A DNA stretch of 64,000 nucleotides, from the IMG/VR virus record IMGVR_UViG_3300047558_000137, positions 124,001-188,000 of that record, one strand, 5' to 3'. A model generated the notes under the pieces. The model had not been told where the DNA came from. It was given only the letters and a program-made list of their open reading frames with translations, and ran no database searches. This document shows positions 1 through 62,124 of the stretch, in pieces (positions within the stretch are counted from its first letter, which is position 1; each line of letters opens with the position of its first letter). The position numbers were made by a program, and so were the translations under genes.

Positions 1-851
1 CTCCACCAATTGTTGCCAAACTCTCGACGAGTTTCTTCTATGTGTGCAGGCAACCACGGTAACATTATTTTTAATGCATCGGTTTCCTGTAAATCTGTAT
101 AAGCATACTCTTGAGCCTGTACAAACGCATTAAGTAAATTTTGAGCAAGCCATCTATGTTGTTCATATATCGATCTACGTATAACAATAACATGCATAGC
201 AGGAAATATATTAGTTAGCCGATAGTAATCTTTTTCTACGTTTGCAAAATCAGGAAACAATCTTATAACTTTCCCGTCACCTTTTAAAAAACTAGTTGGC
301 GTTCTGGCAGCATATAGTGCATCAATTTCGCCAGTATACAACATATTAGACAATGTTTTATTTGAGTCAATTGGGCTCACAAAATCTAAATCAAGTGGTA
401 CACGTTCTATTCTGCCGGGCTGCTCTTGCCCGCCGGTGTAATGTTTTTGCGTAGTTTGATCTACACCATAGTATTCTTGCAAAATGCCACGGATCCATAC
501 AGGTGCAGTCATTTGATATTCAGGGCTCGCTACACGTTTACCATTTAAATCACTCGGTGTTTTAATTCCTGACTCAGCATTAACGTAGATACAACTATGT
601 CTAAAGAATCTAGATGGAAACACTGGAATAGCAACAAATGGTCTTTCTTCAGTATGTAAAGACATGCAGTAACTAGATAAAGACATTTCTGCTACGTCAA
701 AATCTTGATATCGTGCCATTCTGAAGAATGTTTCATCTACAGGTAAATTGCTGTAATACAATTCTGCGCCCTCAACAGACACACACCCGTCAATTAACGC
801 GGCAATGCGATCATAGTTCCAACAGGCAAAACTTAAATTTAATTTTTTCAT
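1..851 (-). CDS. 4,5-dihydroxyphthalate decarboxylase-like / PBP2-fold substrate-binding family protein (runs off window start)
   Basis: Not in ORF track. Hand translation from ATG at 851 (TAATG overlap with upstream stop): MKKLNLSFACWNYDRIAALIDG...ETFFRMARYQDFDVAEMSLSSY...AIPVFPSRFFRHS, typical of this family. Confidence 0.7.
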   Translation of the reverse strand, partial: MKKLNLSFACWNYDRIAALIDGCVSVEGAELYYSNLPVDETFFRMARYQDFDVAEMSLSSYCMSLHTEERPFVAIPVFPSRFFRHSCIYVNAESGIKTPSDLNGKRVASPEYQMTAPVWIRGILQEYYGVDQTTQKHYTGGQEQPGRIERVPLDLDFVSPIDSNKTLSNMLYTGEIDALYAARTPTSFLKGDGKVIRLFPDFANVEKDYYRLTNIFPAMHVIVIRRSIYEQHRWLAQNLLNAFVQAQEYAYTDLQETDALKIMLPWLPAHIEETRREFGNNWW

Positions 852-2071
852 TAAAATCTATTACCTAAGGTAATATTAAATTTTTGTCTAGTATTATCAA
901 ACATTACAGCATCACCAATATAGTAGAACGGAGTTAAGAACCCAACAAAGCCTACCGCACGGCCAAATTCAATATTAAAGTATTTTCGATCAATATTACG
1001 TTCAACAAAATTAATGCCAGCCATCCAACTATTGTATAGTTTATGTCCTTGAAAGTTATTGTAAAACCAAAAGTCCATTTCGCTATAAAAGTTAGTACCA
1101 GGTTTAGATACTTGAAACGTCATTGGATCGTAGTCAGGATAGACCAATGGCTTAACCATTTGTTCGTATGCTGTTCGCTGAGCGTTACTATGATTAGGCC
1201 AACGCACTAGGTATTGTAAATGCTGATTAGCTGGCATACTAAACCAATTGCGTACTAGGTGTGCTTGCTTTACACTGATCTCAGGCAAGTCCGGAGACCA
1301 GAAGAAGTATTCGTTTGTAATATTAGTATACTCACCTATGTCTGGATTGGCATAGTTAGCCTGGAAGTCGATAAAATACAAATACCACTTGTCGTCACGT
1401 ATACACATCTTAGGTTTGTCAATGCCGTATAACACACAGATCTTTTTACCCGAGTCTGCTAATATGCGTTGGTCAATTGTGTGGTAGTTAGGAAACTTAG
1501 TAACGTGTGCTGGTTGTAGGAAGTCTTTGGCTGCATAAACCCACGACTCATCACGGTCTTCATTTTCTAACATGTCTTCGCTGTAGTCGTGGACTGTAAC
1601 TTTAACCTTAGGGTAATGTACCTGCACCCATTGTAACAACGGTTTAGTTGCTAACTCAGCTTCACTTAGAGTATTTTCAACTTTATAGTTACCGGCATCA
1701 ACGGGTATAGTTTCGCCTCCGGCCTTTGGATAACGAAATACAACTTCGTCGATATGAATACCATTAAGTAGAAAACAAAATAGGGTTTGTGCGCTATCAC
1801 TGCCACCTGAACATTCTAGTCGAATATAATCGTAACGATCCCGTAACTGCTGTGCCCTGATGCGATATAATTCTTTGAGATTTACTTCAGGCTCGTGTGT
1901 CCAATTTTGGGCACCATATACTTCGTTATTAAAATTCCAGTTTGGAAATTGATCTGTGCGAGTGCCTTCTATTAGGGCCTGCACCTTACTGTAATATCGT
2001 GTGTCTCCAACTTGATAATAGCCTAGTTTGCTATTCTGTTCAAGGGTAACATCGTAAAATTTATTATTCAT
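851..2071 (-). CDS. PP-loop (adenine nucleotide alpha-hydrolase-like) protein, paralog 1
   Basis: YDYIRLECSGGSDS (SGGxDS PP-loop); similar to 5437-6567 and 60080-61186. Confidence 0.6.
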   Translation of the reverse strand: MNNKFYDVTLEQNSKLGYYQVGDTRYYSKVQALIEGTRTDQFPNWNFNNEVYGAQNWTHEPEVNLKELYRIRAQQLRDRYDYIRLECSGGSDSAQTLFCFLLNGIHIDEVVFRYPKAGGETIPVDAGNYKVENTLSEAELATKPLLQWVQVHYPKVKVTVHDYSEDMLENEDRDESWVYAAKDFLQPAHVTKFPNYHTIDQRILADSGKKICVLYGIDKPKMCIRDDKWYLYFIDFQANYANPDIGEYTNITNEYFFWSPDLPEISVKQAHLVRNWFSMPANQHLQYLVRWPNHSNAQRTAYEQMVKPLVYPDYDPMTFQVSKPGTNFYSEMDFWFYNNFQGHKLYNSWMAGINFVERNIDRKYFNIEFGRAVGFVGFLTPFYYIGDAVMFDNTRQKFNITLGNRF

Positions 2072-2194
2072 TATCTATAATTTAGCCAGCGCAGGAATTG
2101 ATCAGTTTTTTCTGTCCGAATGCCTGTTAGTTGAAATGTGACTCTTGGATTGTAGCCTGCATTGGCTGTGCCCGACTTGTTTCCCAATTGCTTT

Positions 2195-2815
2195 TCATAT
2201 TACTGTTACTCTTACATCGCTTGCGCCATAGTTCTGTTGATATTCTTCGGGTGGTACTTCTATGCCTAACATCCTTGCTAACTGTTGATTAGTTAATGGA
2301 TGCTGCCCTGGATACTTTAGTGCGGCGGCAACAATACCTTGATTCTGCTCTTTGATCTTTACAGCCATGGTCTTAAGATTTACGTAATAGTCAGCGTAGT
2401 TGGGATAGGTAATATCAAAGTGCCCACATTTAACCCACCATCCTAAACAGGCATCGTCGGGTCGATGTACTAGAACAACAGGACAGTCGGGCCAGGTTTT
2501 CTTGATATAATCGATATGATTTGCAAACACGTGGCTCTTAATAATACGAACTCCTGTGCCTGTAAATGGTTCATTGAAGTCAGCTTCTAGTGTAGCTTTA
2601 TCGTACATAGAAAGTCTATGAAACATTTGTCCAAATTCCATGCCAGGGTCATAGTATGCACCAAGATGCATTAGTTCAAGTTGACCGCTGGCATCATGAT
2701 AGTATAATCTATCTTCGCTGTAATCTGTACGATCGACGCTTGGGCTGTAATAAATGTTCTTAACTACACTGCTCCACTTTGAACCAGGAGCGCCGGCTAC
2801 AAAAATATATTTCAT
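2195..2815 (-). CDS. P-loop/sulfotransferase-like protein
   Basis: N-terminal IFVAGAPGSKWS loop and IIKSH motif loosely resemble sulfotransferases. Confidence 0.35.
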   Translation of the reverse strand: MKYIFVAGAPGSKWSSVVKNIYYSPSVDRTDYSEDRLYYHDASGQLELMHLGAYYDPGMEFGQMFHRLSMYDKATLEADFNEPFTGTGVRIIKSHVFANHIDYIKKTWPDCPVVLVHRPDDACLGWWVKCGHFDITYPNYADYYVNLKTMAVKIKEQNQGIVAAALKYPGQHPLTNQQLARMLGIEVPPEEYQQNYGASDVRVTVI

Positions 2816-3783
2816 TTAATATCCTTACTCTTGCTTAGTTCATTAATGATAGGAGAAAAATTCTTTCGAAGTGCAATAGAGTATTTTTTAACACCGTCGG
2901 GGGTTAATTGATCTTCTGGGGATAGAATGTAATTGTCTCTGGCCCAACTCTGATATTCTGCAGATTTAATAGCTCGGGAAAATTCTTGCCTATACCATTC
3001 TAAAATTTCTTTAGGGGTTTCTGGGGGCAAACTAACCATCCAACCTGCGTATACACTGATACCAGGTACGCTATCTTCTAATAGTTTTGCACCAGCAATT
3101 TTTTCAGGCACTTTATTTCCCGTTAATCCTACTAATTTTACCCGGCCGGCGTCAATTAAGGGTCTTGCAATAGCAATGGGCATAATACCAAATTCAACAT
3201 CTTTGTCTCCTGCTACTGCTGTAACTGCCTGTGCAGGCCCTTGGTAACGAACTGCTTGGATTCGTGTTTTGTCACCAGCAAGTTTTAACATTATGTATTC
3301 GTAGGCCATTTGGTGTGCACCACCGCCGACTGCAATGTTGATGCTTCTGTGATTCGATTTCACTGTGGCTAAAAATTGCTGTGGAGTATCAACTAAACTT
3401 GTAGCCTTTGCTACTAATGCCAAGGGACTTTGACCAAGTGTAACAACGTTATTAAATGAATCATACTTAAATTTTTTAATGTCTTGTTGCCAAATGTCAT
3501 TGGTCACAAACAAACTCATGTGACTCGGAACACTAATGGTTAATCCATTTTTCTCTGAGGTAACTAATAAATTTTGAGCTACAACCGCGTCTGCCCCGGG
3601 CCTGTTTTCTACAATAAAGTTTACACCTGGGTTATTCTTTTCAACTATCTGCGATGCTTTTCTAAATGATATTTCGTTGCCCGATCCAGGAGCAAACCCA
3701 ATTAATACACGAACTGGCTGATGTGGTTGCCAAGCAAATGCCAGCGAAGGGATTAATGCCAATATGGCTAATAGTTTTTTCAT
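2812..3783 (-). CDS. tctC: Bug/TctC tripartite tricarboxylate transporter substrate-binding protein
   Basis: Signal peptide MKKLLAILALIPSLAFA; GFAPGSGNE, VENRPGA, YQGPAQAVTAV, GRVKLVG. Confidence 0.85.
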   Translation of the reverse strand: MKKLLAILALIPSLAFAWQPHQPVRVLIGFAPGSGNEISFRKASQIVEKNNPGVNFIVENRPGADAVVAQNLLVTSEKNGLTISVPSHMSLFVTNDIWQQDIKKFKYDSFNNVVTLGQSPLALVAKATSLVDTPQQFLATVKSNHRSINIAVGGGAHQMAYEYIMLKLAGDKTRIQAVRYQGPAQAVTAVAGDKDVEFGIMPIAIARPLIDAGRVKLVGLTGNKVPEKIAGAKLLEDSVPGISVYAGWMVSLPPETPKEILEWYRQEFSRAIKSAEYQSWARDNYILSPEDQLTPDGVKKYSIALRKNFSPIINELSKSKDIK

Positions 3784-3861
3784 GAGTTGTTCCTTTGATT
3801 AAATACTTATAGAAATTTTTGCGTAATGCAAAAATATTTACCAAATACGGAAATTTTTTTA

Positions 3862-4584
3862 ATGAATACTAAAATTTTTACGCTTCTAACAAAAAAATTG
3901 CATGAAGCCTTTAATTTACCCAAGTACTCTAACATAGTAATAGACGAAACAACTGTAGTGGATCAACTACCCTGGACGCCTGCAAGATACCGCAAGTTTA
4001 AAGATGCAGTAGAAGCAGAACTAAGTCTACCCTGCGACTATGTGGGAACACTTCGGGACATAACGCACGATCTAAGTGAGCGTTACATACACCGCTTCTT
4101 TGCGGAAATTTGGAAACCAAGGACAAATGACTATGACTACACTGGCTGGCAACTTGCCGACGAAATTAATGCGCTATCTCCTAGGTCCGTCCTGGACGTG
4201 GGGTGCGGCTATCACCCATTTAGAGGTCGGATATCTAATTTGGTCGGTATCGATCCTTACAACAACTGCGCTGATTATATGGTTGATATTTTGGATTATG
4301 TGGGTAGCCATGACGTCATCATCGCTTTGGGATCTATCAACTTTAATGACCGTGGTGAAATCGAATCTCGCTTTGCAAAATGTGTCGAACTACTAGATGT
4401 TGGTGGGCGTTTTTATCTACGTGCTAATCCTGGAATTACACACAAGACTGGGCCGTACGTAGAAATCTTTAATTGGACTTTTGAAGTTGTAAAAGAGTTA
4501 GGGGACAAGTACAATCTTAAACTAGAAACGTTTAAGAAGGATGCTAACGAAAGACTGTACTTTGTATATTCCAAGTTAGCCTAA
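3862..4584 (+). CDS. Class I SAM-dependent methyltransferase with N-terminal extension
   Basis: VLDVGCG motif, LVGIDP, IIALGSINF; start set at MNTKIF. Confidence 0.7.
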   Translation: MNTKIFTLLTKKLHEAFNLPKYSNIVIDETTVVDQLPWTPARYRKFKDAVEAELSLPCDYVGTLRDITHDLSERYIHRFFAEIWKPRTNDYDYTGWQLADEINALSPRSVLDVGCGYHPFRGRISNLVGIDPYNNCADYMVDILDYVGSHDVIIALGSINFNDRGEIESRFAKCVELLDVGGRFYLRANPGITHKTGPYVEIFNWTFEVVKELGDKYNLKLETFKKDANERLYFVYSKLA

Positions 4585-4690
4585 TACTTAGCCTCTTTTT
4601 GTCAACAAATAAACACAGTTTATTGGTTTGGCATGTGCCTTTTAAATAGTTTTGTGAACGCAAAGTTCACAAAGACATTAGGAGGCACAC

Positions 4691-5440
4691 TTGTCAAAAA
4701 GACACCGTAGAGCAGAAGCTCTAGTAGCAACAGAAAGTAGTTTTAGTAGTAACAACACAGTCCGTTTAGATGGATACAGAAAAACTCAATCCCGTCCAAT
4801 CACCCTCCTTCCCAAAAGTCTCACACAAGAAACATATATTGATCTGTTAACTGATCCTAGTAAACTTATAGTGTTTGCTACAGGTCCTGCTGGCACAGGT
4901 AAAACTATGCTAGCCGTACTTGCGGCACTAAAGGCTTACCGGGCCGGTGAGATCAGTCGCATAGTTGTGACCAGACCAGCGGTGGGTGTAGATGATGAAG
5001 ACCATGGATTCTTACCAGGCGATTTAAATGAAAAAATGGCGCCGTGGACTAGACCTATTTTCGATATTATCGGCGAATATTATCGTCAAAGTGAAATCGC
5101 AAAGATGCTAGATGAACAGACTATCGAGATATCTCCCCTAGCATACATGAGAGGTAGAACATTTAAAAATGCGTGGATTATTGCAGACGAAATGCAAAAC
5201 GCGACACCAAGTCAGATGAAAATGTTACTCACGCGATTAGGCGAAGGCAGCAAAATGATTGTCACAGGAGACACTCGACAAGCTGACCGCAAAGAAGCTG
5301 ATAATGGGTTGCTAGATTTTAAACGTCTAGTAGAAGATTACAAGAAATGCAAATATGTGTCTGGAGTAGATTTCGATCATCGAGATATCCAACGACACCC
5401 TGCTGTACTTGAAATCTTAAAGATCTACAAGGAGGTTTAA
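4691..5440 (+). CDS. phoH: PhoH family ATPase
   Basis: GPAGTGKT Walker A, GFLPG, AYMRGRTF, IADEMQN, GDTRQAD; GGAGG SD upstream. Confidence 0.95.
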   Translation: MSKRHRRAEALVATESSFSSNNTVRLDGYRKTQSRPITLLPKSLTQETYIDLLTDPSKLIVFATGPAGTGKTMLAVLAALKAYRAGEISRIVVTRPAVGVDDEDHGFLPGDLNEKMAPWTRPIFDIIGEYYRQSEIAKMLDEQTIEISPLAYMRGRTFKNAWIIADEMQNATPSQMKMLLTRLGEGSKMIVTGDTRQADRKEADNGLLDFKRLVEDYKKCKYVSGVDFDHRDIQRHPAVLEILKIYKEV

Positions 5441-6567
5441 ACGATATCGCCAATATAGTATTCAGGACTTAAACACGCCTCAAGACTTGACTCACTAGAA
5501 AACAAGTCTGAGTGTATATGTTCTTTTAGATATTTAATACCAAGGCTCCAATTTTTTCCAGCCTTGGTATTAATAAGTTGAGTTGTAAACCAGTAATCAT
5601 ATTCACTATACCAATCCCCAACAGGTTTAATTACCTGGAATGAGTTATCCCATGTAGTATATAAAATATTTTTAAGTAGATCTTCTCTTACTTGGTTTGC
5701 GCCTGCAACAAGTCCATCCTTTGCCCAAAGTCTTTGTAACTGTGGCGATGCCTTTAAAAAATTAAGTATGGCATGGCATTGCTTAGATATCATGTCGCAG
5801 GATTCAGGACTCCAATAGAAATTCTCAATGGTATGATTATCGTATTCGTCCATGTGTACACCAACTGGGATGATATTGGCTATAGTATCCATGAAAACAA
5901 GATATAACTGGTTATTAGTTATCCAGCACCTAGGTTTATCAATTCCAATTATCGTACAAACAGAACGTTGTCTATCTATTCTTGTCCTTATGTCCTTAAT
6001 ACTTAGTGAATTATATCGTTGAACCGCAGCCGGGTTAACAGGGCCCATTGCATCTAGGATCCAATTTTCTTCCGCGTTTGAAAAATATTTGTATACATTA
6101 GATCCACAATCATATATGCTAATTTTTGTTTTAGGCATATTATCAGTGATCCACTGCAACTTTTCTTTAGCATTTAATTCAAATTCAGCATTTTGATTCC
6201 ATGCTGCATTAACTCTAGGATCAATGACAGTTACATTTTTACTAGCTTCAAAAATCCAATTAGACACTACTTCGTCTAACAATAAACCTTGTCGATAAAA
6301 ACTCTTTAGAATATTATGGCAATCTGACCCACCGCTATAATTTAATACCACATAGTCATATTTCTCTCGGATCTCTCTGGCTCTACGGTCATAGAGTTGA
6401 TCTAATGTTTCTATAGGCTCAACATGCCATTTGTGTTGCTGAAAGGCGTCATTGTTAAACTGCCACGCCAATGGCTGATTAACTTCGCTGGCATGCAATG
6501 CACATCGAATTTTACTACTAAATTCTTGTCCATTACATGTGTAGTAACCTAATTTTTTATTAATCAT
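5437..6567 (-). CDS. PP-loop protein, paralog 2
   Basis: YDYVVLNYSGGSDC; shared KLGYY...W.FNN...EP...L..LY..RA N-terminus. Confidence 0.6.
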   Translation of the reverse strand: MINKKLGYYTCNGQEFSSKIRCALHASEVNQPLAWQFNNDAFQQHKWHVEPIETLDQLYDRRAREIREKYDYVVLNYSGGSDCHNILKSFYRQGLLLDEVVSNWIFEASKNVTVIDPRVNAAWNQNAEFELNAKEKLQWITDNMPKTKISIYDCGSNVYKYFSNAEENWILDAMGPVNPAAVQRYNSLSIKDIRTRIDRQRSVCTIIGIDKPRCWITNNQLYLVFMDTIANIIPVGVHMDEYDNHTIENFYWSPESCDMISKQCHAILNFLKASPQLQRLWAKDGLVAGANQVREDLLKNILYTTWDNSFQVIKPVGDWYSEYDYWFTTQLINTKAGKNWSLGIKYLKEHIHSDLFSSESSLEACLSPEYYIGDIV

Positions 6568-7463
6568 TTAAGTGAATTTAATTTTTCTGGCCAGTATTTT
6601 TTCCAACGATTAAAGGTTTTTACTGTATCAACGTATGCCGAATTAGCAGGAATACATCTATCAGCTTCAAATAAAGCTGGCAACGCTGTTGCACGTTTTG
6701 CTGCTTTGGTTAATATGCTGTTTAATTCTTTAACCAACTGTGGATTCATAGATGAAGGTGCATAAATCCCGTACCCACTTACCATATCTTCGAATCCAGT
6801 TAATCCTTGACTAGTAAATGTAGGATACCCTGGATAACTATGTTTTCCTGACGATCCTATTACATTAATTTTACCTATTTCTACGTGCTGTTGTGTGTCT
6901 GCCGGAAGTCCGATACTAAGGTCAAGTACTCCGGATTGTAAATCAATCATAGGCTTAACAGTTCCGCTATATCCAATAAAATTTAATTTAGTATTGGGTA
7001 ATTTAGTTTGCAATTCCCTGGCTACAGCTTCAGTTAAACTACCGATCCCGACTCCTATGTTCAGGATGGGTTCTTTTTGTATATCATTTAATGATTTATA
7101 TTTAGAACTAATCACACTGTATGGTTGCCCATTGCATTCAATCATTACAGGTTGAAAATCATCTACATTATGGCTATCCGCAGGGTAGAAAAAAGGTCTA
7201 ACAAAGAAACTACTACTTGAACTCAATAAGGTTATGCCATTGGCACCTAATACATATTTTGCACCAACACTTCCGCCGGCCCCGGGTTTATTATCATAGA
7301 TAAAAGTATATTTGTTTTGTATCTTATTGGCTTCTTCATTGATAACTCTAATAAAGTTAGCTTGGTTACTACTGGTATCAAATGGCCAGATAATAGTTAC
7401 AATTTCTTTAGCGTGTACGGATAATGACAATACCGCCAGAATAATAGCAAATAGTTTTTTCAT
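6564..7463 (-). CDS. Bug/TctC-like substrate-binding protein (divergent)
   Basis: Signal peptide; DNKPGAGGSVGA, YSGTVKPMIDLQSGVLD, GKINVIG. Confidence 0.75.
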   Translation of the reverse strand: MKKLFAIILAVLSLSVHAKEIVTIIWPFDTSSNQANFIRVINEEANKIQNKYTFIYDNKPGAGGSVGAKYVLGANGITLLSSSSSFFVRPFFYPADSHNVDDFQPVMIECNGQPYSVISSKYKSLNDIQKEPILNIGVGIGSLTEAVARELQTKLPNTKLNFIGYSGTVKPMIDLQSGVLDLSIGLPADTQQHVEIGKINVIGSSGKHSYPGYPTFTSQGLTGFEDMVSGYGIYAPSSMNPQLVKELNSILTKAAKRATALPALFEADRCIPANSAYVDTVKTFNRWKKYWPEKLNSLK

Positions 7464-7469
7464 GATTAA

Positions 7470-7498
7470 ATTATAAAGGAGGAAATAGAAAAAGTCAA
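7470..7498 (-). promoter_or_regulatory. sigma70-type promoter TTGACT-N17-TATAAT, 6 nt before ATG (leaderless)
   Basis: Minus strand ttgact ttttctatttcctcctt tataat ttaatc ATG. Confidence 0.75.
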
Positions 7499-7517
7499 CT
7501 GACCGAAGCCAGTTGAC
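7489..7517 (-). terminator. Intrinsic terminator with UUCG loop
   Basis: GTCAACTGGC-TTCG-GTCAGTTGAC followed by TTTTT, just after ferritin-like gene stop. Confidence 0.8.
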
Positions 7518-7522
7518 GGAGA

Positions 7523-8218
7523 TTAAGCGTGTAGCTCAGACATTGGGATGTGTTGTTTAATACAGCGTAGGTCCCAAAGAATTTCGATAAATTGATCGGC
7601 AAGTTTTTGTGCCTTTGCCTGTGTTTCTTCATCAGTAACTAATTGTTCTAAAGAACGACGGCCTAGACTAGCATGAAACTTTTCGTCACGAGCAATTTCT
7701 TCGTACTTTTCTGCAATTAGTTTATTCGGGGCACACTTAGCCTGCATCACCCAATTACGATGTGCCATGCCTTCGGCAATAAATTGATAGATAGCAAGTG
7801 CTAGTGGGTCATCTGCACATTCAAATCTTTCCAACAATTCAGCCGGGCGAATTGTTTCGTATTCACTGTTTAGTTGTGCTACTCGAATATCTTCTAATGT
7901 AGCGGCCACATCAACTTCATGGCCCAACATATCTTCAACAATATCTTTAACATATTGAAAATGTTTTGCTTCGTCCAACGCCTGCTTGCTTAACAAGAAC
8001 ATTTCTTCTGCAGGAGTATCATACGGCAAAGCAGCTACACGTTTGCTAATCTGTGTACAGTTCATACGCTCGTTAATCATGCGACGACTAAAATAGCCGA
8101 TCATTTCTTCTTTGCTTGGCTTTGCATCAAAGTAACTCTTAACACTATTTTCGTGATACTGATATAACTCTTCGCAATCTTTTTCTATTTTATTTGTAAA
8201 TTCGCGTGGGGTTAACAT
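7523..8218 (-). CDS. Ferritin-like diiron-carboxylate protein
   Basis: Paired ExxH motifs DEAKH and DEKFH with upstream Glu (NERMN, IAEG). Confidence 0.7.
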   Translation of the reverse strand: MLTPREFTNKIEKDCEELYQYHENSVKSYFDAKPSKEEMIGYFSRRMINERMNCTQISKRVAALPYDTPAEEMFLLSKQALDEAKHFQYVKDIVEDMLGHEVDVAATLEDIRVAQLNSEYETIRPAELLERFECADDPLALAIYQFIAEGMAHRNWVMQAKCAPNKLIAEKYEEIARDEKFHASLGRRSLEQLVTDEETQAKAQKLADQFIEILWDLRCIKQHIPMSELHA

Positions 8219-9177
8219 TATTTTTTTCCTAACATTAATTGGTCTAATAGACCTCCGCTAAAGTATGTGTTTAGATTAGTATACATACCTTTAATTGCAT
8301 CTTCGAAACGAGCAAGTTCTGTTGCGTTCATGCGTACGGTCGGAATGCCTTGCTTGGCAGCTTGTGTTTGAACAACAATATTGTCTGCTAGGCTTTCTTC
8401 ACGTTCAATCTTTGCGGCAGCTAAGGCAGCACGGGCAAATATGCCTTGTACCTTTTCACCTAGGCTGTTCCATAACTGCTTGTTGATGATCAAGCTGGTT
8501 AAGAATAGGCTGTGTTCGTTGTCGTTAATGTAACTTGTTTCTTGATCGTGACCAAGAATAAAGTAACGTGTGTACGTTGTTTCGCCGCCATCAACCTTTT
8601 GTTCTTGTAGACCTTTTGCTAGATCTTCAATAAACATAGGTACAGGGTTAGCGCCAACGCTTTGGAATGTGCCCATTGATACTGGGTTGTTACCGCAGCC
8701 AATGTTCATACGGTAAAAGTCTTCTAGCTTTTCAATTGCATGACGGCTAGGAACAATGCGGAATCCACCTGAGTATGTAAACACTAGACCGCGGATATTG
8801 CTTTTTTCAGCAACCTTGGCTAACATGTGTTGACCAACTGCGCCATCAAGTACTTGTTGTGCTTGATCGTGTTCACGGAACAAGAATGGCATACTTAGAG
8901 CATACATATCTTGATCAATTGTGCCAAGTGTATTTGCGTAGACTGTGGCTAGATCAATGCTGCCATTATCTACTAAGTTAATGATACGCTCACGGTCTGT
9001 GGTCAGCGTAGTTAAATTGTCTTGTGCCTGCTTGTTCCATTCAGTTAGATCGATAACGTTGATCTGATACTGTCCGTTTGTTTCTTCTGCTACTTCGCGG
9101 GCGAAGTTTTGGGCAGCTTTAATAAAAACGTGATAAGGTTCGTGGGCTAGTACCCAGTTTAGGGTGATTGGTTTCAT
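8218..9177 (-). CDS. TRAP DctP-like substrate-binding protein (atypical)
   Basis: ALSMPFLFR, GGFR, GANPVPM, KVDGGE; no signal peptide. Confidence 0.8.
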   Translation of the reverse strand: MKPITLNWVLAHEPYHVFIKAAQNFAREVAEETNGQYQINVIDLTEWNKQAQDNLTTLTTDRERIINLVDNGSIDLATVYANTLGTIDQDMYALSMPFLFREHDQAQQVLDGAVGQHMLAKVAEKSNIRGLVFTYSGGFRIVPSRHAIEKLEDFYRMNIGCGNNPVSMGTFQSVGANPVPMFIEDLAKGLQEQKVDGGETTYTRYFILGHDQETSYINDNEHSLFLTSLIINKQLWNSLGEKVQGIFARAALAAAKIEREESLADNIVVQTQAAKQGIPTVRMNATELARFEDAIKGMYTNLNTYFSGGLLDQLMLGKK

Positions 9178-9213: not shown

Positions 9214-9801
9214 TCACTCCCGTGTAATCAACTCAAACACTTCCTTCCAGTTAGTTACTTTTTCAATACCATGCCCATAATGGTACATATTATGCCCGTG
9301 TTCCATTAGGATACTACGCAAACCCAACTGATAGCCCACTTCTGCGTTTTCGGGTTTATCTTCAACCCACCAGCACTTTGAGCCTTTGTAGGGTAATAGT
9401 GCATCGTGCTTGTCTGCGCCAGTATCTAAGCAGATAACCTTTTCAAATGCTGTTTCTCCAAACAGCTTTTTAAGGTTCATTTCACGCAGTTTGCCAGCAT
9501 TTGGATCTAGACTCAAACTGGTAATGCAGTGAAACACATAGCCAAATTCTTCATGCAGACGTTTAACGTAATACATGGCATCACGCAATGGTGGTAAGAA
9601 GCCAATTGCGGCACTTTCGTTAAAGATCTTGATTAGCTTTTTGCCCTGCTCGCGATCAATATTGTAGTTCTTTGCAATATCATATTCAAACTCGCTACCC
9701 GGGACTTTCTTAAATCCGTGTTGCTCCATCCAAATATCAAATGCATATTCCCAATTCAACAAGACGCCATCAGCGTCAACTAATATGACTGAATTTTTCA
9801 T
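9214..9801 (-). CDS. HAD-family 5'(3')-nucleotidase-like phosphatase
   Basis: ILVDADGVL (DxD) and WVEDKPEN motifs. Confidence 0.8.
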   Translation of the reverse strand: MKNSVILVDADGVLLNWEYAFDIWMEQHGFKKVPGSEFEYDIAKNYNIDREQGKKLIKIFNESAAIGFLPPLRDAMYYVKRLHEEFGYVFHCITSLSLDPNAGKLREMNLKKLFGETAFEKVICLDTGADKHDALLPYKGSKCWWVEDKPENAEVGYQLGLRSILMEHGHNMYHYGHGIEKVTNWKEVFELITRE

Positions 9802-52113: not shown

Positions 52114-52189
52114 TGGTGCGCTAGACGGGACTCGAACCCGTACATGGGAGTTTTAGAGGCTCCTGCTCTAACCTTTTAGCTACTAGCGC
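52114..52189 (-). tRNA. Amber suppressor tRNA (anticodon CUA)
   Basis: 76 nt cloverleaf: acceptor GCGCTAG/CTAGCGC, A73, encoded CCA; anticodon arm GGAGC-CT CTA AA-ACTCC; T-arm ACGGG-TTCGAGT-CCCGT. Confidence 0.88.
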
Positions 52190-60079: not shown

Positions 60080-61186
60080 TTACTTACCCAAACAGTAATG
60101 CTTACTGAATACACCCTTGGTACGCAATAACTGGTTTGGCGATACTGCCACAAACGCATTTAGGTACTCTAAGAATGGTTTATCGGATGCAAGATTGTAA
60201 ATTCCCTTGATGTAATTTAATGCCAACGGATCGTGGCTTTTAAATTTCTCTTGCAGTACTGGCTCAGCAGTAGACAGATCTGTGTTATCTACTATTCCAT
60301 TGGAATCTAATGAAATTGACAATATCTTAGTGTGTACTTGTTTCTGTAATGCACTAACGCCGGGTGTTAATTCATCGTGGCGTCCACACGAACGAGCAAA
60401 TCCCCTGTGCCCAGAAACACCTTCAGGGAATAGGTGTTCAGCTTCTGTGCCTTCATATAATTCAACTGGCAACTTAGACACAGCCTGTTTTAATAAATGG
60501 CTTTGTTTAAGTAAAATTTTGGGTTCTAAAAAGAAACATTCTAATCTGTTGTCAGCACCAAATACCTGTCGCATTGGTAAGTCTTTTTGTCTAGACCACC
60601 ACAGACCATTTTTGTATATTAGGAATGGTTTTTCATGTCCCGAAATCATTGCCCAATTTCGGCCATTATATTTTTGTTCGCATTGAATATTAGCAACAGG
60701 GTCAGTTACACAATTAGTAAATGTTCTAATGTCTCCGAGATTTTTGTAAACCCAGTCTTCACTGTCGATAAACTGTTCTCTAATACTGCTATCTAATTTG
60801 TCAACAAATGATAACTTAGTCGTTTTATCCCAATGATTATTAATTAGCCAATTAAATTGAGATGCTGGCATATATTTGAGATCGGCATTGCCAACACATA
60901 TAATTTCATCTATGTGAATTTTGTTTCTAGCAAATACATTATAAATTGTTTGGCTATCAGTGCCGCCGGACCAATAGAATACTAGTATGTCATACTTGTC
61001 CCTGATCCTACGTGCATGTTGATCCATCAATTCTTCAATTGATTCAGTTGGATTAACGGTCCAATCTAATTTGTCGTACTCGGCGGTATTGCAATAGAAT
61101 TGTACAGGTGCACCGCTTAGATAACTTTCGTATTGGGCCAGATATATATTATGGAAACGTTTTCCATTTACTATATAGTAGTACAT
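60080..61186 (-). CDS. PP-loop protein, paralog 3
   Basis: YDILVFYWSGGTDS, IHIDEI. Confidence 0.6.
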   Translation of the reverse strand: MYYYIVNGKRFHNIYLAQYESYLSGAPVQFYCNTAEYDKLDWTVNPTESIEELMDQHARRIRDKYDILVFYWSGGTDSQTIYNVFARNKIHIDEIICVGNADLKYMPASQFNWLINNHWDKTTKLSFVDKLDSSIREQFIDSEDWVYKNLGDIRTFTNCVTDPVANIQCEQKYNGRNWAMISGHEKPFLIYKNGLWWSRQKDLPMRQVFGADNRLECFFLEPKILLKQSHLLKQAVSKLPVELYEGTEAEHLFPEGVSGHRGFARSCGRHDELTPGVSALQKQVHTKILSISLDSNGIVDNTDLSTAEPVLQEKFKSHDPLALNYIKGIYNLASDKPFLEYLNAFVAVSPNQLLRTKGVFSKHYCLGK

Positions 61187-62124
61187 TATTGTTTGATATT
61201 ATAGTCGCGAAACAGTTGCAAATAACTATTAGCAATTCTGTTTTGATCGCGCATTAGATCTGTCGGCGGTGTGCTGTTAGGGTCAATAATAAATGAACGT
61301 ACTAACTCCTGCTTAAATTCGCCTGCCATAAGGGTATGTATCTCTTTACGTAGACGTTGTACAACATCAGCCGGAGTTCCTGCAGGTGCCCAGACTCCAA
61401 ACCATTGGTCACGGCCAGCAAACTGTGGGTATCCTAAACTACGCAATGTTGGTACTCCGGGCAATTCACGATATGGCTGGTCTGCTACTACAGCAATAGC
61501 TCGTAGTTTGCCTGTCTGTACATGAGGTAACACAGCCTGAGGAACAGCAGTCATAAAGTCTAATTGACCACTTAACAAATCCTGTGTAGCCAATGGCTGT
61601 CCCTTATAAGGAACGTGCGTCATATTGGTGTTAGTAATTTGACTTAGCATAGCAGAGAATACGTGTTGAGCATTACCTGCGCCAGGCGAACCATAATTAA
61701 GAGTTCTTGTACGTGCAAGTTCAACTAACTGTCTAATATCCTGAATGCCTGAACTAGAATTTACTGCAACTACCATAGGTAACACTGTCCCAACATAGGC
61801 CACAGGAATTAAATCTGTTTTGTAGTCGTAAGGCGGATCAGTCATAAAGTGTGTGCTTATGGCCAATACTGCCACCGAGCTTAACAACAATGTGCGACCA
61901 TCTGGTGTGCTTTTTGCCACGTGTGCAGAACCAATTGTAGTGTTTGCACCTGGACGGTTTTCTACAATTACAGGACGTTCTGATGTGGACATATTTTTTG
62001 CTAGTAATCTAGCAATAGTATCATTACCGCCGCCGGGACTATATGGAACTACAATTTTAGTTTCGTTTGCATGAACACACAAAGAAATTGCCATAGAAGC
62101 AATTACAATTATTTTTTTAATCAT
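61186..62124 (-). CDS. tctC: Bug/TctC substrate-binding protein
   Basis: Signal peptide; VVPYSPGGGNDTIARL, VENRPGA, PDGRTLL, HVPYKG, GKLRAIAV, WFGVWAPAGTP. Confidence 0.92.
   Translation of the reverse strand: MIKKIIVIASMAISLCVHANETKIVVPYSPGGGNDTIARLLAKNMSTSERPVIVENRPGANTTIGSAHVAKSTPDGRTLLLSSVAVLAISTHFMTDPPYDYKTDLIPVAYVGTVLPMVVAVNSSSGIQDIRQLVELARTRTLNYGSPGAGNAQHVFSAMLSQITNTNMTHVPYKGQPLATQDLLSGQLDFMTAVPQAVLPHVQTGKLRAIAVVADQPYRELPGVPTLRSLGYPQFAGRDQWFGVWAPAGTPADVVQRLRKEIHTLMAGEFKQELVRSFIIDPNSTPPTDLMRDQNRIANSYLQLFRDYNIKQ

What the first reader, a model, noticed from the sequence alone, without database searches (positions are those of the whole stretch)
851..7463. Repeated module: Bug/TctC binding protein upstream of a PP-loop (SGGxDS) enzyme, three times
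Seen: three paralogous 368-406 aa proteins with an SGG[ST]D[SC] PP-loop (851, 5437, 60080). Each is preceded in the same operon by a Bug/TctC protein: directly overlapping at 6564-6567 and 61186, and via one intervening gene at 2812. No TctA/TctB membrane partners occur in the window. Known: PP-loop enzymes adenylate substrates (amide, thio or tRNA modification), and TctC proteins bind carboxylates in the periplasm. Inferred: a duplicated, diversified sensing or scavenging plus activation module. The TctC ligand loop differs between copies (PGSGNE, TSSNQA, PGGGND), suggesting different ligands.
Basis: partly seen in the sequence, partly recalled or inferred. Interest (0 to 1): 0.75.

Follow-up and report, generated by a model that had tools for sequence, protein, structure and literature searches.

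The report
Phage TctC plus PP-loop enzyme pairs
A 374-kb freshwater phage carries four gene pairs, each joining a secreted carboxylate-binding protein (TctC) to an uncharacterised, phage-only ATP-using enzyme related to asparagine synthetase; the pairing recurs in many uncultured phages and probably lets them take up and chemically activate organic acids.

Summary
The window lies in a 374,314-bp virus record from freshwater. It has three TctC genes, each just upstream of an SGGxDS protein. A fourth pair sits 1.2 kb outside the window. The whole phage has four TctC genes and four PP-loop genes, all paired, and no tctA or tctB.

The PP-loop proteins match no Pfam or NCBIfam model. The predicted fold is a PP-loop ATP pyrophosphatase, closest to the synthetase domain of asparagine synthetase B (Z 12.2) and to beta-lactam and carbapenam synthetases. 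There is no glutaminase domain. The family is essentially phage-only: 293 IMG/VR relatives, and 4 short MAG contigs among 185,579 species genomes.

TctC is the commonest neighbour of these genes, in three different gene orders. One phage carries tctC-tctB-tctA directly followed by the PP-loop gene. All phage TctCs have signal peptides.

Best reading (inferred): periplasmic capture and TTT import of an organic carboxylate, then adenylation and amidation in the cytoplasm. The substrate is unknown. The pairs did not duplicate as units, and nothing supports a sensing role. I rate it a new variant of known kinds, of moderate to high interest.

The parts
1..851 (-). 5' part of a 327-aa gene (whole gene G000 123868-124851), a homologue of 4,5-dihydroxyphthalate decarboxylase. 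It has an SBP-like fold and no signal peptide. Its start overlaps the PPA stop (TAATG).
   Evidence: PDB 9jp7 E 9.8e-73, aligned 1-325 of 327; junction; N-terminus
851..2071 (-). PP-loop paralog A (406 aa, SGGSDS)
   Evidence: 53% identical to PPD outside the window
2195..2815 (-). p206, a sulfotransferase-like P-loop protein lying between TctC_1 and PPA
   Evidence: weak Sulfotransfer_3 hit; ESM Atlas neighbours are phage sulfotransferase-family clusters; homologues are fused to SAM methyltransferase domains
2812..3783 (-). TctC_1 (323 aa), with signal peptide MKKLLAILALIPSLAFA
   Evidence: PF03401 8e-17
3826..4584 (+). p252, weakly methyltransferase-like, transcribed divergently from TctC_1
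   Evidence: Methyltransf_23 E 0.043; conserved next to the module in L013, L010 and L014
4691..5440 (+). PhoH-like ATPase, convergent with PPB (context only; conserved synteny)
   Evidence: PF02562 1.4e-68
5437..6567 (-). PP-loop paralog B (376 aa, SGGSDC); this is the protein that was modelled
6564..7463 (-). TctC_2 (299 aa), with a signal peptide and a diverged first ligand loop (DTSSNQAN); belongs to a virus-specific TctC clade
   Evidence: PF03401 1.8e-15
7470..7517 (-). 10-bp hairpin plus T-run (terminator-like) overlapping an 11/12 sigma-70-like promoter just upstream of TctC_2. It sets TctC_2-PPB off as a possible two-gene unit.
   Evidence: consensus scan only; sequence
7523..8218 (-). 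p231, a di-iron (rubrerythrin / R2-like ligand-binding oxidase-like) protein
   Evidence: conserved with DctP in relatives
8218..9177 (-). DctP-like (TRAP SBP family) protein without a signal peptide
   Evidence: PF03480 1.4e-44; N-terminus; PDB DctP matches
60080..61186 (-). PP-loop paralog C (368 aa, SGGTDS), a distant subfamily
61186..62124 (-). TctC_3 (312 aa), the most canonical copy, with a signal peptide
   Evidence: PF03401 6.5e-48; PDB BugE, terephthalate-binding protein, Bug27 and BugD at 1e-41 to 5e-37

Best explanation
Each module pairs a Sec-exported TctC-family solute-binding protein with a cytoplasmic PP-loop ATP pyrophosphatase. The enzyme belongs to a phage-specific family whose fold is that of the asparagine synthetase B, beta-lactam synthetase and carbapenam synthetase synthetase domain, without a glutaminase domain. 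Proposed mechanism, all steps inferred. During infection the TctC is secreted to the periplasm of a Gram-negative freshwater host and captures an organic carboxylate. It hands the carboxylate to the host's TctBA membrane unit; some related phages bring their own. The partner enzyme then adenylates the carboxyl group (ATP to AMP plus PPi) and resolves the acyl-adenylate with ammonia or an amine, giving an amide or lactam. This traps the compound and commits it to use in the infected cell. Four diverged pairs would handle four related substrates. The sulfotransferase-like, methyltransferase-like, dihydroxyphthalate-decarboxylase-like and di-iron proteins interleaved with them would process the same or related, possibly aromatic, acids. 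Shown: gene order, families, predicted fold, signal peptides, conserved linkage. Inferred: substrate class, transport route, chemistry.
For: TctC family and signal peptides. PP-loop motif sits between strand 72-76 and helix 81-92 of a confident model (pLDDT 86.4, pTM 0.88). Fold matches: AsnB Z 12.2 over 283 residues, beta-lactam synthetase Z 10.9, carbapenam synthetase Z 10.0, then NAD and GMP synthetases near Z 8 (Foldseek). Sequence bridge: the short paralog family U matches the PPB PP-loop region (hhalign 96.2%, E 2.2e-9), and the U profile hits NH3-dependent NAD synthetase at E 0.0015 and QueC at 0.022. Linkage in this genome: 4 of 4 TctC genes are paired with 4 of 4 PP-loop genes, with ATGA or TAATG overlaps. 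Linkage in IMG/VR: among 130 non-redundant immediate neighbours of PP-loop genes, 34 are TctC by phmmer clustering; Pfam finds 31 TctC among the 92 of them that are at least 230 aa. Of 99 PP-loop gene clusters, 29 have a TctC adjacent and 47 within two genes. Adjacent pairs number 42, against 14.5 +/- 3.2 (maximum 25) in 2000 within-locus shuffles. The linkage persists in three arrangements: T->P, P->T and convergent. 19 of 20 TctC-centred loci have a PP-loop gene next door. TctC is almost absent from GenBank phages (2 of 50,697 records). Transport link: L074 has tctC, a mini tctB (24.5 bits), tctA (6.8e-139) and the PP-loop gene in one same-strand row. Established knowledge, from my own recall: Bug/TctC proteins bind carboxylates; small-molecule PP-loop enzymes (AsnB, NadE, QueC, LarE, beta-lactam synthetase) adenylate carboxylates; bug genes in Betaproteobacteria commonly sit beside the enzymes that use their ligand; phage pstS is a precedent for a phage-encoded periplasmic binding protein.
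Against: No biochemical data exist and no characterised member is known. There is no sequence-level match to any Pfam, NCBIfam or PDB entry for the long family. About half of the PP-loop genes lack a TctC within two genes. The phage has no TctA or TctB, and its host, and therefore the presence of host tctBA, is unknown. TctC_2 and TctC_4 have lost the canonical PGGxxD loop, so a carboxylate ligand is not assured for them. The partners' family relationships are not congruent. Related phages share synteny by descent, which inflates the counts. No RNA run was listed, so there is no expression evidence.
Confidence: 0.45

Rival explanations
1. The two genes are linked, but not through a shared imported substrate. 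The PP-loop enzyme amidates or modifies an endogenous molecule, such as an envelope precursor (as AsnB-like amidotransferases do for peptidoglycan or O-antigen uronic acids), a nucleotide or cofactor, or a nucleic acid. TctC supplies a co-substrate or gives an unrelated nutritional benefit. The genes travel together as a mobile auxiliary-gene cassette.
For: Half of the PP-loop genes have no nearby TctC. Neighbours also include NMO-type FMN enzymes, ATP-grasp (GARS_A), AMP-binding, radical SAM-SPASM, 2OG oxygenases and fatty-acid desaturases. Partner relationships are not congruent. NT5C and PhoH lie nearby.
Against: Adjacency is kept through three different gene orders and is stronger than gene-order shuffles allow. 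The genes are translationally coupled in all four pairs here. The tctCBA-PP-loop row in L074 ties the enzyme to the transporter. The PP-loop proteins are acidic (pI 5.6-6.5), which is unlike nucleic-acid enzymes.
Confidence: 0.25
2. The cluster builds or tailors a phage-specified small molecule by amide or lactam formation, sulfation, methylation, decarboxylation and oxidation. The TctC proteins bind that product or its precursor in the periplasm rather than scavenging nutrients.
For: The closest solved folds include beta-lactam and carbapenam synthetases. The cluster holds a sulfotransferase-like p206 whose relatives are fused to methyltransferases, a decarboxylase homologue and a di-iron protein. 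Related loci hold rSAM-SPASM and AMP-binding enzymes.
Against: No core scaffold-forming enzyme set is conserved. Module content varies widely between phages. No exporter was found.
Confidence: 0.12
3. The TctC proteins act in the periplasm without transport, as decoys or modulators of host signalling or of superinfection. The PP-loop neighbour is functionally independent.
For: The phage has no TctA or TctB. TctC_2 and TctC_4 have diverged ligand loops. The TctC clades are virus-specific.
Against: This does not explain the specific, repeated pairing with one enzyme family, nor the phage-borne tctBA in L074.
Confidence: 0.08

Closest known systems
Tripartite tricarboxylate transporter (TctC/TctB/TctA) and the Bug family of orphan binding proteins of Betaproteobacteria
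   Same: PF03401 domain, Sec signal peptide and SBP fold. TctC_3 matches BugE, the terephthalate-binding protein, Bug27 and BugD at 1e-41 to 5e-37. As I recall for bug genes, each copy sits beside an enzyme gene.
   Different: The genes are encoded by a phage. This phage has no TctA or TctB. They form virus-specific clades. TctC_2 and TctC_4 lack the canonical PGGxxD loop.
Asparagine synthetase B synthetase domain, beta-lactam synthetase and carbapenam synthetase (class II amidotransferase-derived PP-loop enzymes)
   Same: Best structural matches, Z 10-12 over 265-288 residues. SGGxDS PP-loop at the same strand-loop-helix position. These enzymes adenylate a carboxylate.
   Different: 8-12% identity. 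No PF00733 hit in any of 40 members. No N-terminal glutaminase domain; a family-specific N-terminal region of about 50 aa instead. The family is found only in phages.
NH3-dependent NAD synthetase, QueC and LarE (small PP-loop enzymes acting on carboxylates)
   Same: PP-loop core, Z about 7.3-7.8. The short paralog family U hits them at sequence level.
   Different: Only the nucleotide-binding core matches; the substrate-binding parts are unrelated.
Phage-encoded periplasmic phosphate-binding protein PstS (auxiliary metabolic gene; from my own knowledge)
   Same: A phage supplies a secreted binding protein that would use the host's membrane transporter.
   Different: Different SBP family and transporter class. 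Here the SBP comes in up to four diverged copies, each coupled to a cytoplasmic enzyme.
Phthalate, terephthalate and isophthalate catabolic clusters of Comamonas, with TTT-type binding proteins (from my own knowledge; genome note PMC4472898)
   Same: A TctC-type binding protein sits next to catabolic enzymes. A full-length homologue of 4,5-dihydroxyphthalate decarboxylase lies directly after PPA.
   Different: No Rieske dioxygenase in the phage. The decarboxylase homologue is not found in the related loci. No PP-loop enzyme is known in those pathways.

Membership tests
PP-loop ATP pyrophosphatase superfamily (adenine nucleotide alpha hydrolase, HUP class) | SGGxDS/T motif in the loop between the first strand and first helix of the nucleotide-binding domain | tested here: met
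   SGGSDS, SGGSDC and SGGTDS. In the model the motif (residues 78-83) lies between strand 72-76 and helix 81-92. S78, G80 and D82 are invariant in 40 homologues.
PP-loop ATP pyrophosphatase superfamily (adenine nucleotide alpha hydrolase, HUP class) | Rossmann-like alpha/beta fold shared with solved PP-loop enzymes | tested here: met
   VIA-align: Z 12.2 to AsnB and Z 7.3-8.2 to NAD and GMP synthetases, LarE, MesJ and CysD. Foldseek probability 1.00. This rests on a predicted model, not an experimental one.
PP-loop ATP pyrophosphatase superfamily (adenine nucleotide alpha hydrolase, HUP class) | ATP cleaved to AMP plus PPi via an adenylated substrate | not testable with these tools
   Needs ATP-PPi exchange or AMP-formation assays.
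Asparagine synthetase family (Pfam PF00733 Asn_synthase) | Sequence match to the family profile | tested here: not met
   No member of A2 (40 sequences) hits PF00733 even at E 10. No NCBIfam hit. No PDB hit with the family profile.
Asparagine synthetase family (Pfam PF00733 Asn_synthase) | N-terminal class II (Ntn) glutaminase domain | tested here: not met
   The proteins are 368-419 aa. The PP-loop starts near residue 75, and only about 50 residues of a small beta-alpha unit precede the synthetase domain.
TctC/Bug solute-binding proteins of TTT transporters | PF03401 above the gathering score | tested here: met
   62.1, 57.7 and 164.1 bits against a cut-off of 27. The fourth copy is marginal at 28.1 bits.
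TctC/Bug solute-binding proteins of TTT transporters | N-terminal signal peptide (periplasmic location) | tested here: met
   Basic n-region, hydrophobic core and an AxA-type site in all four copies and in 33 phage homologues. Judged by inspection only; no predictor was available.
TctC/Bug solute-binding proteins of TTT transporters | Two conserved ligand loops (P-x-x-G-G-x-x-D and G-x-G-S-x-x-H; the motifs are from my own recall of Bug structures) | tested here: inconclusive
   TctC_3 (PGGGND, GAGNAQH) and TctC_1 (PGSGNE, GGGAHQ) are near canonical. TctC_2 (DTSSNQAN, GIGSLTE) and TctC_4 (SAADNSAN) have diverged.
TctC/Bug solute-binding proteins of TTT transporters | Works with TctA/TctB membrane proteins | tested here: inconclusive
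   Neither is present in this phage. The host is unknown. Related phage L074 carries tctB (24.5 bits) and tctA (463.6 bits) between tctC and the PP-loop gene.
4,5-dihydroxyphthalate decarboxylase (for the gene at window 1-851) | Full-length sequence similarity to the solved enzyme | tested here: met
   9jp7, E 9.8e-73, residues 1-325 aligned to 21-347. Catalytic residues were not checked, and activity is not testable here.

The most novel reading that the evidence does not exclude
Freshwater phages carry a previously unrecognised class of auxiliary metabolic module. Virus-specific TctC binding proteins are coupled to a virus-only family of AsnB-like adenylating enzymes, in up to four diverged pairs per genome. 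Together they would import dissolved organic acids, possibly aromatic or humic-derived, and convert them to amides during infection. This would redirect carbon and nitrogen flow in infected cells on an ecosystem-relevant scale.
Probability: 0.3. Interest if true: 0.75.

Novelty: new variant of a known kind. Interest (0 to 1): 0.6.

Why it matters
Known phage auxiliary genes for nutrient uptake are single binding proteins such as PstS. Here a binding protein is repeatedly coupled to a dedicated cytoplasmic enzyme, and both partners form clades found almost only in viruses. The counts are large: 293 IMG/VR relatives of the enzyme, and Atlas clusters of up to 311 members for the enzyme and up to 214 for the binding protein. 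That points to long-standing selection in freshwater phages, not a recent host pick-up. If the coupling is biochemical, it gives a defined, testable pair (ligand plus enzyme) for working out what organic acids infected freshwater bacteria take up. It would also add an uncharacterised branch to the PP-loop and asparagine-synthetase-like enzymes.

Tried and rejected
1. Direct physical complex of mature TctC_2 with PPB: the predictor scored 0.00 and returned 'no answer', so it counts neither for nor against.

2. Sequence-level assignment of the long PP-loop family failed everywhere: Pfam at E 10, NCBIfam, PHROGs (only a 16-bit PAPS-reductase hit on the PP-loop of PPC), PDB by phmmer, and PDB by profile.

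3. Duplication of whole modules as units is not supported. Identity matrices are incongruent. Partner divergence correlates only weakly (Mantel r 0.27; 1.3% of within-locus shuffles reach it). An earlier run with cruder pairing gave r 0.43.

4. An unbiased reverse test from viral TctC genes failed. The broad TctC alignment had no searchable block. The narrower one mostly recovered contigs already seen, so the 19-of-20 result is not independent.

5. A complete phthalate pathway is not present: no Rieske domain in the phage, and the decarboxylase homologue is absent from related loci.

6. An ATP-sulfurylase or PAPS-reductase identity was suggested by the AFDB name, the sulfotransferase neighbour and an SsuA-like hit. 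CysD scores only Z 7.6, against 12.2 for AsnB.

7. Cellular origin: only 4 short MAG contigs among 185,579 species genomes. These are probably phage DNA in bins.

8. GenBank phages: no homologue of the enzyme, and 2 metagenomic records with TctC.

9. Literature: nothing on a TctC plus PP-loop module. Only tctA has been noted as a viral auxiliary gene.

10. No RNA run was listed.

11. The host was not determined.

Full report
**What the sequence is.** The window is bases 124001-188000 of a 374,314-bp virus record rated complete by CheckV. Near-identical DNA occurs in freshwater metagenome runs. Phage context is clear: PhoH, an ATP-dependent DNA ligase, and a protein with a tail-fibre-like C-terminus. 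GC content is about 40% throughout, with no compositional island at the finding.

**Checking the observation.** All ORFs are at the stated coordinates on the minus strand.
- The three PP-loop proteins carry SGGSDS, SGGSDC and SGGTDS.
- The three upstream proteins pass the Pfam TctC cut-off of 27 bits, at 62.1, 57.7 and 164.1 bits.
- Gene junctions are ATGA (TctC_2/PPB; TctC_1/p206) and TAATG (TctC_3/PPC).
- PPA and PPB are 32% identical over their full length.
- PPC aligns by BLAST only at the N-terminus. Profile-profile comparison gives 99.96% probability over 234 columns, so it is a true but distant paralog.

A search of the whole phage found a fourth paralog, PPD, at G000 121509-122768. It is preceded, with an ATGA-type overlap, by a fourth TctC that scores a marginal 28.1 bits. 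The genome therefore has exactly four TctC genes and four PP-loop genes, all paired. It has no TctA or TctB.

**What the PP-loop proteins are.** None of 40 family members matches any Pfam model, even at E 10. None of the four phage copies matches NCBIfam. A family profile finds nothing in the PDB.

An AlphaFold2 model of PPB built on 40 homologues is confident (pLDDT 86.4, pTM 0.88). It places the motif between a strand and a helix, as in PP-loop enzymes.

Structure comparison gives the following:
- asparagine synthetase B synthetase domain, Z 12.2 over 283 residues;
- beta-lactam synthetase, Z 10.9;
- carbapenam synthetase, Z 10.0;
- NAD and GMP synthetases, LarE, MesJ and CysD, at Z 7.3-8.2.

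There is no glutaminase domain.

A shorter paralog family (U, about 310 aa, motif SSGLDSQ) occurs in related phages. It links to PPB (hhalign 96.2%). Its profile hits NH3-dependent NAD synthetase at E 0.0015 and QueC at E 0.022. This gives a sequence bridge to the superfamily.

The family is essentially viral:
- 293 relatives in IMG/VR;
- Atlas clusters that are 99-100% viral;
- BFVD matches that are all uncharacterised proteins of uncultured phages;
- no match in 50,697 GenBank phage records;
- only four short MAG contigs among 185,579 species genomes.

**Is the TctC linkage real?** Two long contigs from other samples show the same layout as this phage: DctP, a 231-246-aa gene, TctC, PP-loop, then PhoH, then further TctC/PP-loop pairs.

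Across 79 viral loci, the 130 non-redundant immediate neighbours of PP-loop genes break down as follows:
- 34 TctC, by phmmer clustering (Pfam finds 31 TctC among the 92 neighbours of at least 230 aa);
- 25 further PP-loop paralogs (family U);
- 10 NMO-type FMN enzymes;
- 4 DctP.

Of 99 PP-loop gene clusters (80% identity), 29 have a TctC adjacent and 47 have one within two genes. Adjacent pairs number 42, against 14.5 +/- 3.2 in shuffles of gene order within loci.

The linkage survives rearrangement. Among 47 non-redundant pairs:
- 24 are TctC then PP-loop on one strand;
- 13 are PP-loop then TctC on one strand;
- 10 are on opposite strands.

TctC-centred loci almost always have a PP-loop gene next door (19 of 20). 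These loci overlap the first set, so this is not an independent test.

PPC-type homologues are also often preceded by TctC, but not always.

TctC is otherwise nearly absent from phages: 2 of 50,697 GenBank records. The TctC_2 type belongs to virus-specific Atlas clusters.

**The transport link.** Phage contig L074 (99.5 kb) carries, on one strand, two 2OG-oxygenase-like genes, tctC, a 63-aa tctB-like gene (24.5 bits), tctA (463.6 bits, E 6.8e-139) and then the PP-loop gene. These are followed by an NMO gene, a second PP-loop gene, an AMP-binding enzyme and a radical SAM-SPASM enzyme. This is the strongest evidence that these TctCs serve real TTT transport and that the enzyme is tied to it.

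All phage TctCs examined have signal peptides. The PP-loop proteins have none and are acidic. The two partners are therefore expected in different compartments. A co-folding attempt gave no answer.

**Surroundings.**
- The gene directly after PPA (TAATG overlap) is a full-length homologue of 4,5-dihydroxyphthalate decarboxylase (E 9.8e-73). It has no signal peptide and is not seen in the related loci.
- The gene between TctC_1 and PPA belongs to a phage sulfotransferase-like family. Members of that family elsewhere are fused to SAM methyltransferase domains. The divergent neighbour p252 is weakly methyltransferase-like.
- Upstream of TctC_2 lie a DctP-like protein without a signal peptide and a di-iron protein, a pair conserved in relatives.
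- A hairpin terminator overlapping a near-consensus promoter separates that pair from TctC_2-PPB. This is a consensus scan only.

The region thus reads as a run of small-molecule binding and tailoring genes.

**Mechanism.** The solved enzymes closest in fold adenylate a carboxylate and resolve it with ammonia or an internal amine. Bug/TctC proteins bind carboxylates. Both statements are established knowledge from my own recall. TctC_3 matches BugE, the terephthalate-binding protein, Bug27 and BugD.

The most economical model has three steps: periplasmic capture by TctC, import through host (or, in some phages, phage) TctBA, then adenylation and amidation in the cytoplasm. I hold this at 0.45. 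The fold, families, export signals and linkage are shown. The substrate, route and chemistry are inferred.

**Points against a simple picture.**
- Half of the PP-loop genes lack a nearby TctC.
- TctC_2 and TctC_4 have lost the canonical first ligand loop.
- The pairs did not arise by duplication of whole units. PPA-PPD are 53% identical but TctC_1-TctC_4 only 24% over part of their length. TctC_2-TctC_4 are 35% identical but PPB-PPD only 31%.
- Nothing supports a sensing role.

**Comparison and novelty.** The TctC proteins are members of the TctC/Bug family. The enzymes are members of the PP-loop superfamily by motif and predicted fold. They fail the membership tests for the asparagine synthetase family itself: no profile match and no glutaminase domain. 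They may nonetheless work like its synthetase domain.

I found no description of this pairing in the searchable literature. Only tctA has been listed as a viral auxiliary gene.

I rate it a new variant of known kinds, with interest 0.6.

Noticed in passing
window 1-851 (-); whole gene G000:C1:123868-124851: A full-length homologue of 4,5-dihydroxyphthalate decarboxylase (PDB 9jp7, E 9.8e-73) in a phage. Its start overlaps the PPA stop codon. It has no signal peptide. It is absent from the related loci examined.
   Followed up: partly
window 7523-9177 (-): A DctP-family (TRAP) binding-protein homologue that lacks a signal peptide overlaps, at its stop, the start of a di-iron (rubrerythrin / R2-like ligand-binding oxidase-like) 231-aa protein. 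The pair is conserved in L008, L013 and L016; L010 has the DctP homologue followed by a 246-aa gene. A second DctP-like gene lies at G000 295887-296843.
   Followed up: partly
window 2195-2815 (-) and 3826-4584 (+): p206 belongs to a phage sulfotransferase-like family with 279 representative clusters. Several homologues are fused to a SAM methyltransferase domain. The neighbouring divergent gene p252 is weakly methyltransferase-like, which suggests the two act together.
   Followed up: partly
window 7470-7517 (-): A 10-bp GC-rich hairpin with a T-run overlaps an 11/12 match to a sigma-70 promoter immediately upstream of TctC_2. This is a consensus scan only.
   Followed up: no
window 52114-52189 (-): A tRNA with anticodon CTA (reads UAG; ARAGORN calls it tRNA-Pyl). 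It is a possible amber suppressor in a huge phage. Whether TAG is recoded in part of the genome was not examined.
   Followed up: no
L074:836-9477 (IMGVR_UViG_3300020222_002168): A phage-borne complete TTT set with a 63-aa mini-TctB. It is flanked by 2OG-oxygenase-like genes and followed by two PP-loop genes, an NMO gene, a truncated AMP-binding enzyme and a radical SAM enzyme whose SPASM match is N-terminal.
   Followed up: partly
L099-L118 and L031-L091 (many): A recurrent triad in other freshwater phages: a short PP-loop paralog (family U, about 310 aa, SSGLDSQ), a long PP-loop paralog, and a convergent TctC. Family U is absent from this phage.
   Followed up: partly
L092-L095 (GTDB MAG contigs: Haliscomenobacter, Flavobacteriales, Methylococcaceae, Bacteroidetes bins): The only 'cellular' hits to the PP-loop family are short MAG contigs. 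L092 and L093 also carry TctC. They look like phage DNA binned into MAGs.
   Followed up: no
window 9214-9801 (-): An NT5C-type 5'-deoxynucleotidase lies directly upstream of the DctP-like gene. The position is conserved in relatives (L008, L014, L017, L063).
   Followed up: no
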